DNA of 64,000 bases from Hyphochytrium catenoides (taxonomy: Eukaryota; Protista; Hyphochytriomycota), in assembly GCA_900088475.1 (NCBI GenBank), contig FLMG01000265.1, positions 248,001 through 312,000 on the forward strand, in the 5' to 3' direction. The translations under genes and the position numbers were made by a program. The notes under the pieces are model-generated. The model did not search any database, was not told the origin of the DNA, and was given only the letters and a program-made list of their open reading frames with translations. This document shows, piece after piece, positions 3,490 through 58,979 of this stretch (the stretch's first letter is position 1; every line of letters begins with the position of its first letter).

Positions 3490-6400
3490 CTAGTCCACGG
3501 TCTTCCGATGTCTTGGCTTCGCAAGTTGCAAAAGAAGCTCTCTCCATTCTCTATCAAGCGATGTAATGCTGACATAGAATCCTCTTCCTGAACCTCCTGT
3601 CGCTCCGACTTCATGCTTGATGACTTTAACATAAAGGTCCACCTCCACATACCCGTCAGGTCCTCTTGTGCAGAATGAAGGCATGGGGTCCGGCAGCTGA
3701 ACAGAGGAGATCTTCAAGTTCGTCAGAATGGTGGGCGGATCTCCAGGATAACGCAGAAAAAGGCTCATCTTGGAAACCTTTGCTATCTCTGCGAACTCGG
3801 AGATACGGCCAACGATTTTATCGGTGATGTGGAAATACTTGATGGCAAGAGGAGGATTGACATCTCGTAGAGGATCTGCTTGCTTCATGAAGGACTGACG
3901 GTATCGTCCTCCCACTCCAGTCACGTTATACAGCCGTAGCGTGCCAATTCCATGCTCGTCAAGGCAAACTTCAGATGCACTCTCTACCTCAGCTACTTTC
4001 GCCTCCCGATAAGTTGAGTGAGAGATCAAGATCTGATTACCCGTGGTGTAAGACTCAATCTTGGCCGCAATGCTCACAGTATTGCCTACCACACCATATT
4101 TTGCTCTCTTCAGACTGCCGATGTTTCCAGCGATGGCATTGCCCGTGTGGATTCCTATGCCCATTTCAATCTCTGAAAGGCCATCAAGCTGGTTGAGCCT
4201 GTTAACTTCCGGCATTGCTGCTTGCATTGCAACTGCACAGGCCACCGCTCTTTGAGCATCATCAAATTTGCTGATAGGGGCTCCAAAAATGACTTGCATC
4301 CCATCTCCGATGATCTCATCCACCACCCCACCGTGAGCATGAATGATCTCAAGCATTCGCTCCAAGTAGCGGTTCAGAAAGCTGACCACCTGTTCAGGCC
4401 GTAAACGGCTGCTCAGAGCAGTGAAACCTCTAAGGTCTGACATGAGAATGGTGACTCTCCTCCTCTCTCCGCCGAGCTTCAGACCTTCAGGAGAGTCGAG
4501 AAGCTTTTCGACCACGTCATCTGTTACATAGCGGCCAAAGGCCTCTCTCATGAACTTGTGTCGTTCCTCGAGAGACTTGATTTTCGTCATGTCACGGATA
4601 ATAACGACCACTTCACCACCTTCATTGTCGTTCATCAAAGCGCCAGAAAAAAGCACCGGCACCGTCTTGCCCGAACAGTGCTGGATAGAGGTTTCTAGAC
4701 CGATCAGGCCCCTTCTATGACGGGCCTCTAGCTCCTTGAGGTCCGGGAAGAGCATGTTGATTGATTTCATCCGAAGCTCCTCTTCGGTGTAGCCAAACAG
4801 CTCACAAGCGGCGGAGTTGACCATCTTGACCTCTGCATCCTCCAGCGAAAGACGCTTGACGAAGGAAGAGCGATTGAGGTCCAGCCCACTGCCAGATTTC
4901 TTTTTCCCTCCATGGCCCAGTAGAAGGCCATCCTGTGTGATCTGTTCTATTTTAAAGACAAGTAGGGCCTCGGACATGCTCTGTAGGATGTTGTTTACAT
5001 AGCTTCGAGACACCGTCGTTGTCATCAGTGCCTTTGCCATATCATTGGCAGCCTCCGATACCTTCTCCATCTCGTCCTTCGTTTTCACACGGATCTGATA
5101 CGAGAAATCACCGTTGCCAAAGTGGTCCATGCCTCTCTGGATAACGATGAGAGGATAAAGTAGGAGATTCGAAAGGGCGACGGTGCACGCGGTGATGAAG
5201 ACCAGACACGCCACACAGACATAAGCAATATTTCTCCGCATGTCATTGAGGTCACCTAGCGCTTCGTTCCTGTCGATTTTGCATACCAGAGTCCAGGGTT
5301 GAACGTCCAGGATGCCGCCGGAGTCCCGCAAGTCGATATCGGTCAATTTCACCTCGACGCTGACGCCGCGGTAGTCTACCAGAGGAGAGTTATCCTCTGC
5401 TGGAGTCCAACTTTTTTGATAGAGAACCGAGGTATTATACGTTCTCATGCGCAGGACGTCCTCTGAGCTAGAGCCGTACTCGGCACTGAGACGAAAGAAC
5501 TCCTCCTTCTCCTCGTTTGAAGCATTTGGGAAGAAGAGGGATTCTGTTCTAAGCCTGCCGTCATTTTTACCTTGAATGTAAGCATCAAAGGTCTTCCACT
5601 CCACAAAGTTCACACCCTGTGGCCCCTCCTGCTTAGACATGAACTGGTTCAACCCCTGCGCAGATATGGAGACCACAACTAGTGCTTGCTGCTTGTCAGG
5701 CTGGTAGGAGAAGTATGCCTCGGACCTCATTTCTGCAGGAAAGTACAGCCAGAAGTCGGAACGGGAGACGTCGCCCTTCGCTTGAGCATTCGCTATAGTA
5801 GCGAGAGGAGACGCTCCGTCACCCTGTATGTCCGGATACCAAGGGCGAGCGTAAGGCCCTGACCTGACATCTGCAAAAAGATCCACTCTAGAAGGAAGCG
5901 AGTAGATGATCGTTCCATCTAAAATAATCATCAACGTGGCGAACATTTTCCTCTCTAAGAAGCTTTTGAAGGTGGGATCATGAAGCGCTTTCAGACGCGA
6001 GTATTGCGCTACACCTTGCTCCAATGCAGCATTCAGAGACTGATTGAAGACAAGCTTCTGTTGAAGAGCTTGAGCCCACCAGTCCTTTGGAACAAGATCA
6101 GAGGCAGAAGAGCCGAGACGCTGAAGCTCATTCCTTTCCATTTCTGGTCTGCCTTGAACGTACTGCTCGTAGAGAGTCTTGACATCTCCGCGTAATTGTG
6201 CCTTGACCGTTGAACTAGGTCCGGTGGTCCCATTCTTCATCACTTCGATTGCCTGTATAAAGTCTGAGATGGCTGCCGTGACGTTCTGAGTGTTAGAGAA
6301 GAGTTGCAGCTCCCGCTCTATATCCTCTAGGTACGCTTTGATCTGTATAGTTTTACGAGAAAAGAGGAGAATGCAGTAAGCCCGGCAGTCACGGCAGACA

Positions 6401-7331
6401 GAGATTGGAAAGTCAACGCTCAGCCGCCCACAAGGGAAAATTGTAATCTCAAGGGCAAGGATGGGAGGGAAGAACTAGGCAGATGTGACCTAGGCCCTCG
6501 AAGATGAAAGCTTAGGAAGGATACGAAGCCGTGAATGACACCTGAGGCTCAGCTCAACTGATTCATTGGGAGACTCTGAGAAGGAGATTCTAAGACGAAA
6601 TAGGTAGGGAAGGAGAACGGAAACGGGAACCGGTAGTGGACTAGGCACATCATAATCAATCTCATAGCAGAACCATAGACTGACGGAGCAATGACTAACC
6701 AGATTTACTCTGCCATTTGAGATCAGCATCAAAGAGTTCTTGGTCTGGCTCTGAAAGCGATTGGCTGCAATGGTAAAGCTGAGCGTGGCCGTAGTAATGA
6801 TGGCAGCCAGTCCAATGATGACCATGGTCACGACTAGCTTTGGCCGGACGCCGCAGATGAGGAATCTCCGCTTCTGCTGAGCACAAGAGGGATGATAAAG
6901 TATCAAGAAGGAGAAAGAACGGATATAGGACAGATGGGCTGGCTTGACAGGTAAGGACTCAAAACAACGCGGAGACACAAGCCCAGGAGGCTGAAAAAAA
7001 GGGCGATAAAAGCTGAAGAGAGTCATAGTATAAAGGCACAAAAGTCAGGCTTGCGCACAATAATAAAATAAAAGGCAGGTCACTCCGGCCACTGACAAAC
7101 CTCCATTGGCCGTCCGCCAATCTGGCTGTCCTCTGAGCCTGATGGGGACTTGAACTGCGCTATGTCTCTACTTTGGATGGGAACGAGGACCCGCTCCAAA
7201 AACGCAGAGCTCCGGAAGAGGTCCTCATCCCCTAGTCCCCCTACCTCGGAGTCCCCGGAGAGAGATGACGTTCGCATCTGCGTCGGTGAGCGCTCAAACT
7301 TGGAGGGAGGCCCTCCTCTCTTCCTGATCAT
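3490..7331 (-). CDS. Class III receptor nucleotidyl cyclase (TM-Cache-like sensor-TM-HAMP-PAS-cyclase), Cya2-like putative guanylyl cyclase
   Basis: Exons about 7331-7101, 6876-6700 (TM1) and 6341-3490, joined in frame by GT-AG introns. HAMP: LYPLIVIQRGMDHFGNGDFSYQIRVKTKDEMEKVSEAANDM. PAS: VNSAACELFGYTEEEL. Cyclase motifs: ILMSDLRGFT, DEIIGDG, MGIGIHTG, GNIGS..RAKYGVVG. The true start codon is uncertain and may lie further upstream. Confidence 0.9.
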
Positions 7332-8529: not shown

Positions 8530-10429
8530 CTATGGCCTAACTGTTAGTGGTAGATACATGCTGGCGAACGGTGGATGACGGCTTCCTAGCTTTCCCCTTG
8601 CGCACCACCCTGAGTACAGAGTGTAGAGCGCTATCAGACTCGAACCAAAGCCTAGCCCTCGAAGGAAGGCGTCGACAAAAAGACTCCAGCGACTTCCCCT
8701 CCTCTCTGTGGGTCTTCTTCCTATCTCCTGTTCTACAGTCTCCGTTACCTCAACGAAGGCGGAATCTATCTCATAAAGCGGCATGAAGGAGCTGTTGTAT
8801 GCACAGGACGTGTCAGGGTTTCTGAAGCTGGGAGGATGGGGCTTGCTCCCTGGGGCTCGCTCGAACGGAGAAGGCTCGGGGAGGATACTGTCCAAGAAGG
8901 AGAGCGCTCGGGCAGCTACCTCTGGGTTGCGATATTCGTCATTTAACGTGAAGAACTTGAGGCTCCATTTCCCTTCCTCTATTGCCGTGAAGGTCTCATT
9001 GAGGTATGGCAGGTTGTTATCCTTCATAACGAAGAGTGCGAAGCTATTCATCTCCTCCTGAGACGCGATCTGGATGGAGGGTAAGCCGTCTATGAACTGA
9101 CCTTCAGCAACCATGTAGTACATATGCAATAAAGGGACGTTCACATCTGTGCGGGAACGAAAGCGGCTACTCAGCGTTGCGAAGAGCTCTCTCTGCCACT
9201 TCCGGTGTATGATGTGGAAGGCCGTCTTGCTATATATGAAGGGTGCATGCTTGAGAAACCTTCTCTCTTGCATCCCATACGCTGCATCTAACATTTGTTG
9301 GGTACGGAGAACAGAGGAGATCCAGATACCTCCATTCTCTACGGGCTTTTTATGAGAGATCACGTGCTTCTCCTGAAACACTCGAAGCCCTCCTTCGCAA
9401 GAAAAGAGATCATGAGGCGTAATATCATGTCCGAAGATGTAGTCATCGTTGACCTGTATGAAGGTCTCTGAAAGTCCAGGAATGAGATAGAGAAACTGCT
9501 CCAAAACGTTTGTGTTAAACGTGGGGAGAGCGTGTTTGGCATTGTCTGGGAAGAGTGAGTCCTGGTCTACTACCCGGATGCGCTCACTATTGATATCCAG
9601 CCAACTTGGCACCTAAGGTCAAACAACACAAGGTAGAGGTATTCGAGAGTCAGGGGCACAGCTATTGACAATGAAAACGAACGGAAGTGAAAGACGACAG
9701 ATAGTCTGGACAAATAGCATCGGGGGTAGTTGACCTTCAACAGAGCCGAGACAGGAGAAGAGAAGACTGGCACGGGAAGAAAGGCCCTCTCACCTGTCCG
9801 GGTGTGACAATGTAAATAGTCCCAACCAGCCAAGGCGCGTTCTTTATTAGTGACCGGAGTGAGTATTTTAGCTCTCCAATGTCTCGATCCCTTGATCCAC
9901 CGACAGCGGACGGTCCTCCATGTTTTAGTCTGCTCTCTTTGTAGCAAGGATCGCTGCCGTTGACCCAAGTGTACACAATGGACGAGTGACGCAGTTGCTC
10001 AAAGTTCTTAATCACGCACTTGCCGGGCCACTGCTCCTCAAACGTAAGCGCAACGTCATTTCGTAGGACGGGAAGGGTATTCACAGGCGTTGATAAGACT
10101 AGAGCTCCTACGATGAGAACGAAGCCTACGGTACATAAGAAAAGCCCACCCCGTGCTTGAAGAGTTAAGCGGCTTCTAAGCGTCTCTCTCAAACAACGCA
10201 TTCCTCTTCTCAATGGCCAGTAACAGCATATTTCAGCCGTCTTCACGTTCATTAGACACCAGTAAGAAGCTGCAGGCGCTGTGCGGACGCAAAGGCAAGA
10301 TCGTACTACTCTCTGCGCAACAATGCGGTCGGGTGAAGGAGAAGAGCAAGATGCCGTATGAGGTGTGTTCCAGCGGTCTGAGCCTGTCTCCCCCGAAGAG
10401 AAAGGAATTTCTGCCTCTCCTTCTTCCAC
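8530..10429 (-). CDS. Stealth-family hexose-1-phosphate transferase with N- and C-terminal TM helices
   Basis: CR1 IVYTWVNGSDP; CR2 ELKYSLRSL..NAPW...TPGQ|VPSWLD...LPTFN...VNDDYIFG; CR3 KHAPF...RFRS; CR4 FFTLNDE...PSPFE. One phase-0 GT-AG intron at 9793-9613. The start is either ATG 10429 or the later MRCLRE ATG. Confidence 0.9.
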
Positions 10430-26349: not shown

Positions 26350-28379
26350 ATGATTGGTCTGCGGCATAAGCTCCGCAAGCCCCGGCTAATCCTTTTTCTA
26401 TCACTTTCATGCGGTACCCTTCTTTACTCTGTTTTTAACAGCCGCATACAGAGCAACGGCTCTGAAACATCGGGTGAGCGGGTTATCTTTTTATTCACAA
26501 GTTCTACTAAGTGAGCTAAAGCAGTGTTGTCATAGGGCTTGCGCACGAACATGAATCCAGTCTTGGTCTTCGGCAACGGCTACGATCCCTTTCTCCGGAA
26601 GCACAGGACGCGCTGCAGCATGTAGAACCTTTGGCATTCAGCCCTGTCAAGAGGAACCCCGACGATCCATGCTATGGAAAGAAAGATTGGACTTTCGCCT
26701 GTGAACCAGATCTGTTTCTGAGCTGTATAGCGGCTATTGTGTGTCTGATTCTGACGGCGGGAATGATGGCTGGACTAACTATGGGCCTGCTCTCCCTTGA
26801 CACGCTCAACTTATCGATTTTGAAGCTCGAGGGTGAACAGAAAGAGAAGGAGGCAGCGGAGAAAGTTCTTCCAATAATCGCTAACCACCATCTACTTCTG
26901 GTCACGCTTCTTCTATGGAACTCCTTTGCCAACGAAGCGCTTCCTATTTTCCTCGACAAAGTGACGGACGAATACTCAGCCATTCTGATCTCCATGACTT
27001 GCGTCCTCTTCTTTGGCGAGATTATCCCTGCAGCCTTCTTCACTGGACCCCGCCAGCTCTTCGTTGCTGCTAAGCTTTGCCCGCTGGTGCAGATTCTGCT
27101 TTTTCTCACCTTTCCAGTCGCTTATCCCATTGGAAAGGCCCTAGATCTCGTCTTAGGGCACTCCCAGGATATGACACGGTACAAGCGGAACGAGTTGAAA
27201 GCGCTCGTCGCCATGCAGAAGGAGAGAATGGATGGTATGGAGCAGATGCTCTCTCGCGCAGCTGACCATAGCCACTATGGTGGGTCTCCTCGCAGGCGGC
27301 ACTCATCGTCTTCTCTGGAAGAGAGCACTCTAAATGTGGACGAAGTGACGATCATTCACGGAGCATTGGATATGGCTCACAAGACGGTACGCGATGCCAT
27401 GGTGCCTTGGAAGGAAGTCTTCACTCTGGATGCGAACTTGGTGCTCGACGACGACTTAATGGCAAAAATAATGTCTACTGGCCACAGTCGTATCCCTATT
27501 TACATGGCAGATACCATGAATATTAGGGGCCTCCTCTTGGTCAAAAAACTCATCGTGGTTGACCCTGACGATAAGAGAAAAATAGGCGATCTTGCCCTCC
27601 GCAGGCCCATTCTCACACACCCGAAGGCAGGCTTGTATACTCTACTTAATCGCTTTCAGACAGGGAAAAGCCACATGGCATTAGTGACCGAGAATGTGGA
27701 CTACGTGAAGCGATGTTGGGCGGAGAGAAGGCCGATTGACCCAGAGAAGGTGACATTCGAAGGTATCATCACTATTGAAGACGTGATTGAGGAGCTAATC
27801 CAGGAAGAGATTGAAGACGAATCTGATCTCACTCAAGACATCTGTGAAGAGTTGACCAGTCACAAAGTGTCGCCTGAGGCAACCATGAAAGTCGTTCTGA
27901 TAGCTGTGGAAAAGTTCAAAGCTTTATTGAGGCGGGCTAAGAGGAGAAAGGAGGAAGTTGACCGGTTGGTAGAGAGTGTAGAGATGGAGATCAGACAGAA
28001 CGAGTCCGCCAATCATCGGGGTAGGTCAGATGGACAAGGGTATGTTCGAGAGATTATCGATGAAAGACCGCCCCCAGCTCCTAGGAGGCGCTCTCGGCAG
28101 ACCTCACCGACGAACCGTGAGAGGTTGCACAGTAGAGAGCGGAAGCCATCGAGGAATAGTACTACGGAGTCCGAATACGCCAGGAAGTCGAGCTGGACTT
28201 TGACAGGCGGAGCCACAGCCACTGCCGTGGCGATGAGTTTTGGCATGTCCCCTGCCAAGCGCTATCAAATGCTTGGAGGTGGCTTGCAAACGGCCGGAGG
28301 ATCTGACGGTTATGGGCAGAAGGACAACCTGACCAATGGAATGACAGGAGAGAACTCCCCCTTGCTGCGCAAGCATTAG
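26350..28379 (+). CDS. CNNM/DUF21 plus tandem CBS domain metal (Mg2+) transporter, Mam3-like
   Basis: Exon 26350-26473, a 62-nt GT-AG intron, then exon 26536-28379. Motifs: AGMMAGLTMGLLSLD, HHLLLVTLLLWN..ANEALPIFLD, FGEIIP, GHSRIPIY, FQTGKSHMALV, GIITIEDVIEELIQEEIEDESD. Confidence 0.93.
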
Positions 28380-56004: not shown

Positions 56005-58979
56005 TTATCCTTCAATCTCTTTCCGGATAGTTTCGTTGAACTGCTTCAGCCCAACCAATACGTCTTTCCATTGTTGCTAGAAAGATTGAGGAGAAGGTGG
56101 TTGAGCCAAAATGTTAGTTGTCCTGACTTGAGCAAAAAGACTCACCAGCTGTATCCTCCCCTTCTCGCTATCCGCGGGAACGGTTTGCTCTTCAGCTTTC
56201 CTAAGATCTTTGAGTGGCCCCATCGAATTTACTAAAGCAAGAAAGTCTCCGAGTCCCGTTAGGTCGCCTCTGTCAGGAAGCCCGATTGAGCTGAAAGACT
56301 CGACAGCAAATGGCAGAGCCTAGCAATAAGGGTTAGAGGGGGCGCGGAGCGCAAAGCAGACTAGTCAGTCGAAGAGCACACCTCTTCCTCGAGGTCAAGC
56401 TGAGCGCGATTTTCCTTTCTCCAGCTTGCGGGTTCACTCTGACTTGGGCTCATCCAGAATGGCTTGGGCAGATCTGTGGCAAAGGTCGGAGGCATTGGGT
56501 CACGCATAGGAAAGCAGGAAGCATCGCATAGAGGTAGTTTTAAGACTCCAAAGTCAATGCAAATAGGCTTCATCAAATCGTGAACCGCTATTTACCTTCT
56601 CGATGCGATAGGGTGGCCCTATAAGAGCTGCTAGAGAGGGAGGTGCTCCTATCAGAACGAGTGGAGCCAATTCCAAATACACTTTGGAAGGACGCAGGGT
56701 TTGGCACGGGGCCTTGGCCTGGAGAGGTCTCCAAGGAAGGACGCGGGGATGGCGAGTAGATGAGGTTGCTCGACTGCGAAGTAAAAGGTGGTGAAGAGCC
56801 TAGTACGGTAGGACCATTGAGTGAAAGAGGAGAGGGATGGGTTTGCGCTATGCTTGGCGAACACGAGAATGGTGGAGTCTGCTGAACAACAGGAGGAGAA
56901 GACCCGATGGGGATGGCTCTTGTGTGTGTAGAAGGGCTATTTGTCCTCTGGGTTTCATCCAATTGTGCTCCGTTCAATACATCAGTGACCTTCCCTGTAG
57001 CCCTGTTTTGAGCGTCATCAGAAGTGGAAGCACCGTCCTCTAGGTATAGAGGTTCAGGGGATTCCGGAAAACTTCGAGGGAGGGGAGCTGAAGTTCTCTT
57101 AGGAAGAGAGCTCCCTCGGGGATGCAATGGGGGTGAGCGCATCAGAGACCTCTCTGAGCCCAGCGATCCGGCTTCAAATTTAGGATAGCTTTCTCCTCCA
57201 CCAGGATGCGCTGCGTGATTAGTATAACCGAAAGGGTTTGCAAGAGGCGTGTTGTTCCAAAGCCCAGGAGATCTGGATAAGGGGTCATGGGATTTGACAT
57301 CAAGACTTTTAGCATGGATCCTGCTATCGCTGTGTCTAGGAGCCAAGTTGCCCGCTGAAAGCCTAAATTGCACTCGAGTCGCGTCGTCAGCAGAAGTAGA
57401 GGGCTGTCTGCCCAAAGTCGGTATCGGCAGCTCATTGTGAACGCCCGATGGCGCAGATTTGGGGATTTCCATAGGACTTGACCGATTGCTGTACGTCTCC
57501 AGGGATGGGCTTGTGCCTAGGCGAGGATGCTCACGGTAACCTAATCCTTGACCTTCATCATAACGCCCTGGCAATGCAGAATCTTCCGCTTTGTTGCTGA
57601 CAGAGGTGTGGCTTCTACCTTCTCCATCATCTTCGTGGCTTGATGGGGAGACCCTCGATGGTACATAGTCTTGAATAATGACGTTGGTAGAGATGAGTGG
57701 GTACTGAGGCTGCACCTCAAATGAGCAATCTCTTCTGTATTGACATACGAAGACAAGATTGCCATATGGTGCTTCGATGATAGGAAAACCATAGGAGGAG
57801 ACAGCAACGTCGGAGCTAAAGCTCAGCTGAGAGACGTTTTGAATTCGCCCAGCGGCTGCTGTACCGGCAGTTGGTGGGCCGTTATCTCCCGCAGCGTAGA
57901 GAGCATAACCCATACAACCTGCCGAGGGCGTCCCCTGCGAGCTGCGAAAGAGGCGATAGGCAGGTAGCGTTCTTGCAAATGTGAAAGCTACCCGTAACAT
58001 GACCCCTATTCTTTTGCAGACCTATTGAATGTACGATCGATGAAAAAGCAAGCGTCAGCGCCAAAAGGCCAAACCATAGCATAGCAGAGTGGTGACAGTA
58101 TTGACGAGTAGTAGTAAAGAGAGAGAGCTTGAAAACCATCATGAGACGGACTTATGGCGGAGGAAGGAATCAAATTTTTAGAGGCAAGAGCTAGCACAAA
58201 CGGGATATGATCTCAACCTGTCGAAGCTGCGCGATGACTTTATCTGGGTTGGAAGGCTCCCGCTGATTTCTAAACTGTATTACCCAACGCTCCAACAGAA
58301 TCTATTGACAAGGTACAGTTAGAGAACGAGTCTCTTTGGCTTTGAGAGTCAGGATGCTGCGAGCCTGACTAGCGTTCCGATAGAGAGAGAAAGAGCATAT
58401 ATCTCAGACCATTCATTGTCTGGTAGGCGGCTCAGTGATTTCCACCAAGTCGATGGCGTGCCTTACCGGTCGGCGAGTATCCTTCTTACTCCCATGTGAG
58501 CCATTGTAGTTCTTGGCACTACTCGGATCCCAGAACACGTCCAGGCAAAGAGGAGTATGGACGTCGCTCTTCCATCTTGACATTTTTCGGCGGATATAGT
58601 CGATCTCATCTATATCAAGATTGAACTGCATAAGGGTAAGAAAGAAATTAGGCGAGGCCCTGGAATAACTTTAACCTTGAATGCAGATCCTGTTATGGAG
58701 ATACAATGTCCATCAAAGATCACTTCTTGAGTGTGATCAAGCAACCTCAGCCGTGCAGAGATCGCATAGATGTACAGAGTAACGTACCCGCGCACGCCTT
58801 TGTCGGCTCTCAATGTCAGGCTGAAAGTTAACCCTTGCCTGTGTAACCACCTCCACTATCTTGAACAAGCATTCCACCACAACCTGCTCCGTCTTTGTTC
58901 TTCCGGAGGCCGGATCCTTACCACTAACGCTTACGAAGGAGGAAGAACTAGCTCTCCGATGGGTTCCTGTGTAGGACAT
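56005..58979 (-). CDS. ATG13: Autophagy-related protein 13 (N-terminal HORMA domain, S/P-rich disordered region, C-terminal ATG1-binding region)
   Basis: KTEQVVVECLFKIVEVVTQARV...RFNLDIDE...ILLERW...VMLRVAFTFARTLPAYRLF. The C-terminal EEEALPFAVE and GDFLALVNSMGPL resemble the conserved ATG13 C-terminal motifs. Confidence 0.88.

What the first reader, a model, noticed from the sequence alone, without database searches (positions are those of the whole stretch)
3490..7331. Bacterial-architecture receptor cyclase with a Cya2-type guanylyl cyclase signature in an intron-containing eukaryotic gene
Seen: TM-large extracellular Cache-like domain-TM-HAMP-PAS-class III cyclase-C-terminal beta-rich domain, with introns only near the 5' end. 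The substrate-specifying positions are Glu (VDEIIGDG) and Gly (RAKYGVVG) rather than the Lys plus Asp/Thr of adenylyl cyclases. Known: Glu/Gly at these positions is the pattern of the Synechocystis Cya2 guanylyl cyclase, while animal guanylyl cyclases use Glu/Cys. The chemoreceptor-like Cache-HAMP-PAS layout is typical of bacteria. From memory, the C-terminal tail (PLAIKYF...TNLKI...DLYVKV...FYVSITSL) resembles the extension on cyanobacterial and deltaproteobacterial cyclases. Inference: a horizontally acquired one-component chemosensor feeding cGMP signalling in a flagellated protist. This is the best candidate here for an undescribed system.
Basis: partly seen in the sequence, partly recalled or inferred. 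Interest (0 to 1): 0.72.

Follow-up and report, generated by a model that had tools for sequence, protein, structure and literature searches.

The report
Bacterial-type receptor cyclase in a protist
A relative of the oomycetes carries an intron-split gene taken from bacteria for a membrane sensor joined to a Cya2-type cGMP-making domain, but exactly three catalytic residues are replaced, so it probably works as the helper half of a two-part enzyme rather than making cGMP alone.

Summary
On the minus strand at 3490-7331 lies a gene encoding TM1, a double-Cache sensor, TM2, HAMP, PAS, a class III cyclase domain and a C-terminal beta domain. It is collinear over 895 residues with uninterrupted bacterial proteins. 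Intron 2 falls exactly between residues that are adjacent in those proteins.

The catalytic domain is closest to Synechocystis Cya2 (E = 4.5e-54) and keeps its Glu/Gly base pair. The C-terminal tail has the PilZ fold but lacks the c-di-GMP-binding motifs. It is a hallmark of the whole Cya2-like family.

All nearest relatives found are bacterial. A tree places the protein in the dCache-HAMP-PAS cyclase clade, on a very long branch. The donor phylum is unresolved. Composition matches the host, a stramenopile near the oomycetes.

Of 46 positions that are at least 95% identical in 330 bacterial relatives, the window protein keeps 43. The only three it has lost are Cya2 Asn569, Arg573 and Lys608. 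This is the pattern of the non-catalytic partner in heterodimeric cyclases, such as chytrid NeoR.

Unverified first-stage notes of this scan list three more such genes on other DNA of this genome.

No RNA data were available, so expression and intron 1 are unverified.

The parts
7101..7331 (-). Putative exon 1: ATG at 7331, 77 codons, a Ser/Gly/Glu-rich N-terminal extension with no homologue
   Evidence: Translation. GT at 7100-7099. No TM segment. No RNA or homology support. An alternative start, an ATG near 7026 inside 'intron 1' and in frame with exon 2, cannot be excluded.
6877..7100 (-). Putative intron 1 (224 nt, GT..AG)
   Evidence: 5' site GAG|GTTTGTCA, 3' site ...TGTGCTCAG. Pyrimidine fraction 0.69 against 0.46-0.52 in the exons. 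In-frame stops.
6700..6876 (-). Exon 2 (59 codons), holding TM1 (residues 14-32, nt 6781-6837) and the start of the sensor's first helix
   Evidence: The N-termini of P0045, P0112, P0130 and P0162 all align here.
6343..6699 (-). Intron 2 (357 nt, GT..AG, phase 0)
   Evidence: Two in-frame stops. 5' site CTG|GTTAGTCA. Pyrimidine fraction 0.64. The junction is collinear with P0045 residues 56/57.
3490..6342 (-). Exon 3: 950 codons plus a TAG stop at 3490-3492. It encodes everything from the sensor to the C-terminus.
   Evidence: End-to-end BLASTP with P0045: 34% identity over 895 aa, E = 3e-137.
5230..6342 (-). Extracellular double-Cache (dCache) sensor (exon-3 residues 1-371) with an N-terminal helical region of about 130 residues
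   Evidence: Model pLDDT 80.9. The top Foldseek hits are CtaA, PctA/B, PscC, DctB and TlpC dCache domains at probability 1.0. 14 positions are invariant across 14 homologues.
5173..5229 (-). TM2 (exon-3 residues 372-390)
   Evidence: Kyte-Doolittle mean 2.54 over 19 residues.
5026..5175 (-). HAMP domain
   Evidence: PF00672, 25.7 bits against a cutoff of 25.
4561..4839 (-). PAS domain, preceded by a host-specific insertion of about 26 residues (4840-4917)
   Evidence: PF13426 39.3 bits and TIGR00229 44.8 bits. The insertion is visible in alignment A2.
3889..4482 (-). Class III cyclase catalytic domain of the Cya2 type, preceded by the FGRY transducer motif (F at 4537-4539)
   Evidence: PF00211, E = 3.1e-27. 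PDB 2w01 (Cya2), E = 4.5e-54. Asp 4435-4437, Arg 4429-4431, Glu 4315-4317, Asp 4303-4305 and Gly 4093-4095 are kept.
4072..4074 (-). AGC Ser at the position of Cya2 Asn569 (ribose contact)
   Evidence: Asn in 326 of 330 bacterial modules.
4060..4062 (-). AAG Lys at the position of Cya2 Arg573 (phosphate contact and transition state)
   Evidence: Arg in 330 of 330 bacterial modules.
3952..3954 (-). CAT His at the position of Cya2 Lys608 (phosphate contact)
   Evidence: Lys in 326 of 330 bacterial modules.
3493..3879 (-). C-terminal PilZ-fold domain (exon-3 residues 822-950), with an inserted segment spanning window 3649-3693 (an ~11-residue gap against the bacterial relatives in alignment A1)
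   Evidence: Model pLDDT 88.9. The top Foldseek hits are all PilZ domains. 20 of 75 family tails hit PF07238. RxxxR occurs in 4 of 75 and [DN]xSxxG in 0 of 75.

Best explanation
This is a whole bacterial one-component receptor gene: TM, dCache sensor, TM, HAMP, PAS, Cya2-type class III cyclase, PilZ-fold tail. A stramenopile close to the oomycetes acquired it by horizontal transfer and has fully domesticated it. It has host composition, at least one intron inserted within the homologous coding region (a second, upstream, is predicted) and host-specific insertions.

Inferred signalling path: a ligand binds the extracellular dCache domain. The signal passes through TM2, HAMP, PAS and the FGRY transducer element to the dimeric cyclase.

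The catalytic domain keeps the two metal-binding aspartates, Arg450 and the Glu/Gly pair that reads guanine. It has lost exactly the three residues that hold the ribose and phosphates and stabilise the transition state (Asn to Ser, Arg to Lys, Lys to His).

In a head-to-tail class III dimer, those three residues and the metal aspartates come from opposite subunits. A homodimer would therefore have two crippled sites. A heterodimer with an intact paralogue would have one competent site, built from this protein's aspartates and the partner's Glu/Gly/Asn/Arg/Lys. It would also have one degenerate site that may still bind GTP and act as a regulatory site.

I therefore read it as the non-catalytic partner subunit of a heterodimeric guanylyl cyclase, bringing its own sensor.

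What is shown: the architecture, the bacterial ancestry, the eukaryotic integration and the residue pattern. What is inferred: the heterodimer, GTP as substrate, and any ligand.
For: Architecture and collinearity.

Cya2 kinship and Glu/Gly pair.

Bacterial ancestry:
- No representative among 1.84 billion is closer than bacterial-type proteins at 35-39% identity (the contigs examined are short or densely packed metagenome and MAG contigs without taxon labels).
- None of the 120 best module hits carries a eukaryotic source label or a eukaryotic name.
- Full-length relatives occur in Methylomirabilota and Binatia MAGs.
- The careful tree puts the window inside the dCache-HAMP-PAS clade with support 93/97.
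- The constrained tree scores 27.8 log-likelihood units better than the free quick tree.

Integration in the host:
- Neighbours are ATG13, CNNM and Stealth genes.
- The CNNM gene is 45-55% identical to oomycete proteins.
- GC is 0.503, GC3 is 0.562, and RSCU correlates at r = 0.72 with the neighbours.
- Intron features are described.

Selective loss of catalytic residues: 43 of 46 near-invariant positions are kept. The three lost are Asn569, Arg573 and Lys608.

Precedent: chytrid NeoR lacks NxxxR (it has T and K), is inactive alone, and forms active heterodimers in which only one site is catalytic (PMC12264004).

Candidate partners: unverified first-stage notes s1-338274 and s1-342129 report three more dCache-HAMP-cyclase genes in this genome.
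Against: - No partner sequence could be read, so complementarity is untested.
- The replacements are conservative: Ser can hydrogen-bond, and Lys and His can carry charge. Some homodimer activity is therefore possible.
- No RNA evidence of expression was available.
- The very long branch (1.6 substitutions per site in the module, 3.45 in the N-terminal half) could reflect relaxed constraint.
- In NeoR, restoring N and R did not restore activity. The motif alone therefore does not decide activity.
Confidence: 0.6

Rival explanations
1. It is an active homodimeric guanylyl cyclase. Ser, Lys and His substitute well enough for Asn, Arg and Lys, and the receptor makes cGMP by itself when its ligand binds.
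For: The metal aspartates, Arg450 and the Glu/Gly pair are intact. The substitutions are chemically conservative. The fold-defining and interface positions are conserved, 43 of 46. Cya2 works with a single active site (PMC6005667).
Against: Arg573 is invariant in 330 of 330 relatives, and Asn569 and Lys608 are each present in 326 of 330. The NxxxR motif is described as crucial for the transition state and is missing precisely in the non-catalytic halves of heterodimeric cyclases (PMC12264004). Three hits on one functional side are unlikely to be neutral.
Confidence: 0.2
2. It is a pseudo-cyclase or a decaying gene. The cyclase domain no longer catalyses anything. The protein is either a ligand or nucleotide-binding receptor with a non-enzymatic output, or a recently inactivated copy of a gene family.
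For: Loss of three catalytic residues. A very long branch. No expression data. Several paralogues could make one copy dispensable.
Against: An intact 950-codon exon with no frameshift relative to bacterial homologues. 43 of 46 near-invariant and 89 of 105 positions with at least 80% conservation are kept. Invariant sensor residues are retained. This is not the pattern of random decay.
Confidence: 0.15
3. The gene came from the cyanobacterial lineage (a Cya2 relative), for example as a relic of an endosymbiont, rather than from another bacterial phylum.
For: Cya2 is the best solved match. The nearest ESM Atlas cluster, for both the window protein and its sister P0045, is a dCache-HAMP-cyclase cluster whose labelled members are mostly Cyanobacteriota. 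The contig of P0164 has 43% GC, like the cyanobacterial loci. The AU test does not formally reject grouping with the cyanobacterial clade (p = 0.08).
Against: The careful tree places the window in a clade that holds Methylomirabilota and Binatia MAGs and is separate from the CHASE2-type cyanobacterial clade. The constrained cyanobacterial tree is 6.9 log-likelihood units worse. The family is spread over at least ten phyla.
Confidence: 0.25
4. It is bacterial contamination or a chimeric assembly, not a gene of the eukaryote.
For: All close relatives are bacterial.
Against: The gene lies within a 64-kb window with eukaryotic genes on both sides of it in the wider region. It has the neighbours' GC, GC3 and codon usage. 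A 357-nt stop-containing intron with GT..AG ends interrupts it at a collinear position. It is only 34% identical to its best bacterial relative.
Confidence: 0.02

Closest known systems
Synechocystis sp. PCC 6803 Cya2 (sll0646), guanylyl cyclase, PDB 2w01
   Same: It is the best solved match to the catalytic domain (E = 4.5e-54). It shares the Glu488/Gly562 base pair, the supporting Lys-Tyr, the metal aspartates, the FGRY transducer motif, and a C-terminal extension of about 118 residues that boosts activity in Cya2.
   Different: Cya2 has a CHASE2 sensor and no HAMP or PAS. It keeps Asn569, Arg573 and Lys608 and is active as a homodimer. The window protein has a dCache sensor, HAMP and PAS, is encoded by a eukaryotic gene with introns, and has Ser, Lys and His at those three positions.
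Uncharacterised bacterial dCache-HAMP-PAS-cyclase-PilZ proteins (P0045, P0112, P0162, P0130; Methylomirabilota MAG L006; Binatia MAG L007)
   Same: Same domain order and similar length (about 960-970 aa). Collinear from TM1 to the C-terminus at 30-36% identity. Sister or containing clade in the module tree.
   Different: They are uninterrupted bacterial genes with the full catalytic set. The window gene has introns, a putative N-terminal extension, an insertion before the PAS domain and another in the PilZ-like tail, and the degenerate triad.
NeoR subunit of heterodimeric rhodopsin-guanylyl cyclases of chytrid zoospores (Rhizoclosmatium globosum)
   Same: A class III cyclase domain lacking the NxxxR motif (T...K in NeoR, S...K here) in a protein that brings its own sensor. 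NeoR is inactive alone and supplies the metal-binding side of the single active site in a heterodimer with a paralogue.
   Different: The sensor is unrelated (rhodopsin against dCache-HAMP-PAS). The base pair is Glu/Cys. NeoR belongs to a different, fungal cyclase lineage. Heterodimerisation is demonstrated for NeoR and only inferred here.
Naegleria Cache-containing bacterial-type adenylate cyclase (noted in Upadhyay et al. 2016, PMC4822843)
   Same: A protist gene combining a Cache sensor with a bacterial-type class III cyclase, attributed to horizontal transfer.
   Different: I did not compare the sequences. It is described as an adenylate cyclase. Nothing is reported there about a Cya2-type Glu/Gly pair, a PilZ-like tail or loss of catalytic residues.

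Membership tests
Class III nucleotidyl cyclase (Pfam PF00211) | Sequence match to the catalytic domain profile above the curated cutoff | tested here: met
   95.8 bits against a cutoff of 21.9, E = 3.1e-27. 57 PDB cyclase chains match.
Class III nucleotidyl cyclase (Pfam PF00211) | Two metal-binding aspartates | tested here: met
   Asp at Cya2 positions 448 and 492, as in 330 of 330 relatives.
Class III nucleotidyl cyclase (Pfam PF00211) | Asn and Arg of the NxxxR motif plus the phosphate-binding Lys, which make a site catalytically competent | tested here: not met
   Ser, Lys and His at Cya2 positions 569, 573 and 608.
Cya2-type bacterial guanylyl cyclase subgroup | Glu/Gly pair at the base-recognising positions, with the supporting Lys-Tyr | tested here: met
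   Glu (VDEIIGDG) and Gly (KYGVVG) align with Cya2 Glu488 and Gly562.
Cya2-type bacterial guanylyl cyclase subgroup | Closest sequence kinship to Cya2 among solved cyclases | tested here: met
   2w01 scores E = 4.5e-54. The next unrelated cyclase, CyaB, scores 1.9e-28.
Cya2-type bacterial guanylyl cyclase subgroup | Conserved C-terminal extension after the catalytic core | tested here: met
   The tail aligns with cyanobacterial CHASE2 cyclases and others. It is present in 255 of 303 fetched relatives.
Cya2-type bacterial guanylyl cyclase subgroup | Preference for GTP over ATP and activity as a homodimer | not testable with these tools
   This needs an enzyme assay. The residue pattern argues against full homodimer activity.
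dCache_1 extracellular sensor (Pfam PF02743) | Profile match above the curated cutoff | tested here: not met
   No hit at E < 1 in the window protein. Among the collinear homologues, P0162 (49.7 bits) and P0165 (46.3) pass the cutoff of 45. P0130 (44.6) falls just below it.
dCache_1 extracellular sensor (Pfam PF02743) | Tandem PDC (double Cache) fold between two TM helices | tested here: met
   Model pLDDT 80.9. The top 47 Foldseek PDB hits are dCache-type sensor domains of chemoreceptors, sensor kinases and related proteins, at probability 0.93-1.0. TM segments flank the region.
PilZ domain (Pfam PF07238) | PilZ beta-barrel fold | tested here: met
   Model pLDDT 88.9. Foldseek ranks 1-24 are all PilZ domains, TM-score about 0.4-0.65 normalised to the model. 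20 of 75 family tails hit PF07238.
PilZ domain (Pfam PF07238) | c-di-GMP-binding motifs RxxxR and (D/N)xSxxG | tested here: not met
   The window tail has neither. Across 75 family tails, RxxxR occurs in 4 and [DN]xSxxG in 0.
Heterodimeric class III cyclase, non-catalytic subunit (as in NeoR, tmAC C1, sGC alpha) | Metal-binding side intact, NxxxR side degenerate | tested here: met
   The pattern is described for NeoR, sAC and tmAC in PMC12264004.
Heterodimeric class III cyclase, non-catalytic subunit (as in NeoR, tmAC C1, sGC alpha) | A partner subunit with an intact NxxxR side exists and pairs with it | not testable with these tools
   Paralogues are reported by first-stage notes. Their sequences could not be reached.

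The most novel reading that the evidence does not exclude
After a bacterial homodimeric Cya2-type receptor cyclase entered this stramenopile lineage, it duplicated and the copies specialised into a heterodimeric guanylyl cyclase. Each subunit carries its own extracellular dCache sensor. One subunit (this gene) supplies only the metal-binding side and a degenerate regulatory GTP site. This would be an independent, recent replay of how eukaryotic heterodimeric cyclases arose. It would also be the first eukaryotic protein with a PilZ-fold domain and with a dCache domain lacking the VWA insertion said to mark all eukaryotic dCache_1 proteins.
Probability: 0.35. Interest if true: 0.75.

Novelty: new variant of a known kind. 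Interest (0 to 1): 0.58.

Why it matters
It documents the transfer of a complete bacterial one-component receptor, from sensor to output, into a eukaryote. The gene then gained at least one intron and apparently expanded into a small family.

It would put a Cya2-type guanylyl cyclase module, with its PilZ-fold tail, in a eukaryote.

It contradicts the generalisation that all eukaryotic dCache_1 proteins carry a VWA insertion (PMC8915833).

The exact, selective loss of the Asn/Arg/Lys triad offers a natural test case. It could show how homodimeric cyclases become asymmetric heterodimers with a regulatory pseudo-site.

As a by-product, the 'structurally uncharacterised' C-terminal extension of Cya2, which is needed for high activity in optogenetic cyclases (PMC5995499), is identified as a PilZ-fold domain without c-di-GMP motifs. 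It is conserved across hundreds of bacterial cyclases.

Tried and rejected
- The first word-index search with the whole ORF drew its words from the N-terminal half. It found only weak cyclase-domain hits and no close relative.
- The three top hits of the region search (P0042-44) looked like orthologues. They are bacterial proteins with two cyclase domains whose scores are inflated.
Source names for P0042-45 could not be obtained.
- The look-up of sequencing runs listed no RNA run. Read laying was therefore not used, and the introns could not be checked with reads.
- The search for related loci with the N-terminal alignment A2 failed for lack of conserved stretches. The full-length alignment A3 worked, but the scan stopped at 600 pattern matches, so the taxon list is incomplete.
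- phmmer with the C-terminal tail alone found almost nothing. A profile was needed.
- The 102-row quick tree left the window protein unplaced on a long branch. The 58-row careful tree and the AU tests were needed.
- The tree of the N-terminal half is unresolved for the window protein.
- Rauch et al. 2008 (PMC2572937) is not held. Cya2 residue roles were taken from the review PMC6005667.
Each exon was searched by reference, and the joined step is left out.
- Searches by sequence in the scan's own findings returned nothing.
- I found no paper that calls the Cya2 tail a PilZ domain. That search covered only the held library.
Full report
**The gene**

The minus strand between 3490 and 7331 carries one gene. 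A 917-codon ORF (3490-6243) continues open upstream to 6342.

My reading of the exons is as follows.
- Exon 1 is 7331-7101, 77 codons starting at an ATG.
- Intron 1 is 7100-6877.
- Exon 2 is 6876-6700, 59 codons.
- Intron 2 is 6699-6343.
- Exon 3 is 6342-3490, 950 codons plus a TAG stop.

Intron 2 lies between codons (phase 0), and so does intron 1 on the predicted model.

Intron 2 has two in-frame stops. Both introns are pyrimidine-rich (0.69 and 0.64, against 0.46-0.52 in the exons). They have similar 5' sites, G|GTTTGTCA and G|GTTAGTCA.

Each was searched by reference, and the joined model was left out.

**Architecture**

Pfam finds HAMP, PAS_9 and Guanylate_cyc above their cutoffs. NCBIfam agrees on the PAS domain and on the HAMP region. 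Hydropathy gives exactly two membrane segments, one in exon 2 and one at exon-3 residues 372-390.

The 371 residues between them do not hit Pfam dCache_1 directly. However, the protein aligns end to end with the uninterrupted 963-aa bacterial protein P0045 (34% identity over 895 residues, E = 3e-137). Relatives of P0045 do hit dCache_1, and P0162 passes the curated cutoff.

An AlphaFold model of the sensor, built on 14 homologues, has pLDDT 80.9. Its best Foldseek matches in the PDB are double-Cache ligand-binding domains: CtaA, PctA, PctB, PscC, DctB, TlpC and Mlp24/37. The model has about 130 residues of helices at its N-terminus. This probably explains the modest TM-scores.

**Intron 2 confirmed by homology**

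Exon 3 begins at the residue that aligns with P0045 residue 57. Exon 2 aligns with P0045 residues 10-49 and, by extension, ends at residue 56. The N-termini of four bacterial homologues all find exon 2 as their best match in this part of the window.

So a stop-containing 357-nt segment with GT..AG ends sits exactly between two residues that are adjacent in the bacterial proteins.

Exon 1 and intron 1 have no such support. An ATG near 7026 would be an alternative start. No RNA run was listed, so neither expression nor splicing could be observed.

**Catalytic domain**

Among solved structures the best matches are the Cya2-based fusion 6fht (E = 4.3e-63) and Cya2 itself, 2w01 (E = 4.5e-54). They are far ahead of CyaB at 1.9e-28.

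I used the table of key residues in PMC6005667 and the numbering offset derived from the printed alignment. I then checked the result on an alignment of the window protein with 330 bacterial modules.

| Cya2 residue | Role | Window protein | 330 bacterial modules |
|---|---|---|---|
| Asp448 | metal | Asp | D 330 |
| Arg450 | phosphate | Arg | R 329 |
| Glu488 | base | Glu | E 314 |
| Asp492 | metal | Asp | D 330 |
| Gly562 | base | Gly | G 262 |
| Asn569 | ribose | Ser (AGC, 4072-4074) | N 326 |
| Arg573 | phosphate, transition state | Lys (AAG, 4060-4062) | R 330 |
| Lys608 | phosphate | His (CAT, 3952-3954) | K 326 |

But three other catalytic residues are replaced.

Of the 46 alignment columns that are at least 95% identical among the 330 bacterial modules, the window protein matches 43. 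The three misses are exactly these three residues. It also matches 89 of the 105 columns conserved at 80% or more.

This is not random decay. It is a targeted loss of one functional side of the active site.

**The C-terminal tail**

The tail aligns with the tails of cyanobacterial CHASE2 cyclases (Tolypothrix, Calothrix, Aerosakkonema). It also aligns with response-regulator cyclases and other architectures. A profile of it finds it in 255 of the 303 proteins fetched up to that point.

In several bacterial members it passes Pfam's PilZ cutoff, and 20 of 75 tails hit PilZ. The model of the window's tail has pLDDT 88.9: six strands and a terminal helix. Its 24 best PDB matches are all PilZ domains, including Alg44, MotI, YcgR, VCA0042 and BcsA.

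The c-di-GMP-binding motifs are absent from the window tail and essentially from the family. RxxxR occurs in 4 of 75 tails and (D/N)xSxxG in 0 of 75.

Etzl et al. (PMC5995499) describe the 118-residue Cya2 extension as structurally uncharacterised and as strongly stimulating activity. I found no paper in the held library that calls it a PilZ domain.

**Origin**

- **Exhaustive search.** A search of 1.84 billion representatives with the whole exon-3 product found nothing closer than dCache-HAMP-PAS cyclases of 906-970 residues at 33-39% identity. The contigs I could inspect for these are short metagenome contigs carrying uninterrupted ORFs. The ~1,800-residue hits are kinase-STAND-GAF-cyclases of bacterial type.
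- **Source labels.** None of the 120 best hits to the module carries a eukaryotic source label or a eukaryotic name. Such labels are abundant in the CNNM search.
- **GTDB species representatives.** Full-length relatives were found only in a Methylomirabilota MAG and a Binatia MAG. Matches limited to the C-terminal part of the protein, from the PAS or catalytic domain onwards, come from at least ten phyla. That scan stopped at 600 pattern matches.
- **Trees.** A careful maximum-likelihood tree of the cyclase-plus-tail module (58 rows) puts the window protein inside the dCache-HAMP-PAS clade (93/97), sister to P0045 and P0112 (93/81). It is apart from the cyanobacterial Cya2 clade.
- **AU tests.** On the 102-row set, constraining the window to the dCache-HAMP-PAS group gives a tree 27.8 log-likelihood units better than the free quick search. 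Grouping with the cyanobacterial clade costs 6.9 units (AU p = 0.08), which disfavours it without rejecting it.
- **Atlas and composition.** The ESM Atlas's nearest cluster, for both the window protein and P0045, is a bacterial dCache-HAMP-cyclase cluster whose labelled members are mostly cyanobacterial. The contig of P0164, which groups with P0045 and P0112, has 43% GC.

The donor phylum therefore stays open.

The window protein's branch is very long: 1.6 substitutions per site in the module and 3.45 in the N-terminal half.

**Host context**

Neighbouring ORFs encode Stealth, CNNM and ATG13 domains. The CNNM protein is 45-55% identical to proteins of Achlya, Aphanomyces, Saprolegnia, Phytophthora and other oomycetes, and to none more closely. 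The host is therefore a stramenopile near the oomycetes but outside the sequenced ones. I did not test whether it is flagellated.

The cyclase gene's GC (0.503), GC3 (0.562) and codon usage (RSCU r = 0.72 with the pooled neighbours) are those of the host. Contamination is very unlikely.

This scan met similar genes before on other DNA of the same genome. First-stage notes describe one 'fully intronised' Cache-HAMP cyclase (s1-338274) and a tail-to-tail pair (s1-342129). These notes are unverified, and I could not read the sequences. There is no second copy in this window.

**How it most likely works**

In class III cyclase dimers each active site is built from both subunits. One subunit supplies the metal aspartates. 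The other supplies the base-reading pair, Asn, Arg and Lys (PMC6005667; PMC12264004).

A homodimer of this protein would have Ser/Lys/His in both sites. A heterodimer with a paralogue that keeps Asn/Arg/Lys would have one complete site, using this protein's aspartates. It would also have one degenerate site that still carries this protein's Glu/Gly pair and might bind GTP as a regulator.

Chytrid NeoR is an exact functional precedent. It lacks NxxxR (it has T and K), is inactive alone, and forms heterodimers with RGC1 or RGC2 in which only one site is catalytic. Removing nucleotide binding at the other site raises activity up to ninefold.

I therefore favour the partner-subunit reading, at about 0.4 on its own. 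The alternatives are a weakly active homodimer (0.2) and a non-enzymatic or decaying copy (0.15). The overall statement, a bacterial-derived, domesticated Cya2-type receptor with an asymmetric catalytic domain, is much safer.

**Comparison with what is known**

- Cya2-type guanylyl cyclases and bacterial dCache-HAMP-PAS cyclases are known kinds.
- A Cache-bearing bacterial-type adenylate cyclase in Naegleria was noted in 2016 (PMC4822843).
- Gumerov et al. state that all eukaryotic dCache_1 proteins they found carry a VWA insertion (PMC8915833). This protein has none.

I rate it a new variant of a known kind. It is interesting mainly for three things: the selective catalytic asymmetry, the eukaryotic PilZ-fold domain, and the apparent family expansion. 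It is limited by the absence of any expression or biochemical evidence.

Noticed in passing
P0050, P0088, P0091, P0107, P0162 and about 250 other fetched proteins; alignment A4: The C-terminal extension of Cya2-like bacterial cyclases, called structurally uncharacterised in PMC5995499, is a PilZ-fold domain lacking the RxxxR and (D/N)xSxxG motifs. It accompanies the catalytic domain whatever the N-terminal sensor (CHASE2, receiver, GAF, dCache, kinase-STAND).
   Followed up: partly
L001:1418-9036 and L002 (GCA_030427205.1, contig JAUHXC010000012.1): A bacterial protein with two tandem Cya2-like cyclase domains (P0043, 1011 aa) lies next to two 160-aa cNMP-binding proteins and a Ser/Thr kinase. 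In L003 its relative P0042 is followed by a kinase fused to a cNMP-binding domain. This looks like a possible bacterial cGMP signalling neighbourhood.
   Followed up: no
L077 (Thermodesulfobacteriota MAG JBMORF010000056.1): Three separate ORFs on one locus each carry the complete cyclase-plus-PilZ-like module, so this is a local gene cluster of paralogues.
   Followed up: no
window 8530-10429, minus strand: A Stealth-family gene (conserved regions CR1 to CR4) is split between two ORFs (9737-10429 and 8530-9612). CR2 is divided between them, which implies an intron of about 120 nt.
   Followed up: no
window 26631-28376 (+) and 56588-58000 (-): A single-exon CNNM/DUF21 transporter ORF is 45-55% identical to oomycete proteins. 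There is also an ORF with the C-terminal part of ATG13. Both were used only to place the host.
   Followed up: partly
window about 2140-2535: A dinucleotide microsatellite reads as (SL)n in one frame of an ORF just downstream of the cyclase gene's 3' end.
   Followed up: no
window 4840-4917 and 3649-3693, minus strand: Two host-specific insertions relative to all bacterial homologues. One is a Gly/Lys/Ser-rich segment of about 26 residues before the PAS core. The other is a segment in a loop of the PilZ-like domain (an ~11-residue gap in alignment A1).
   Followed up: partly
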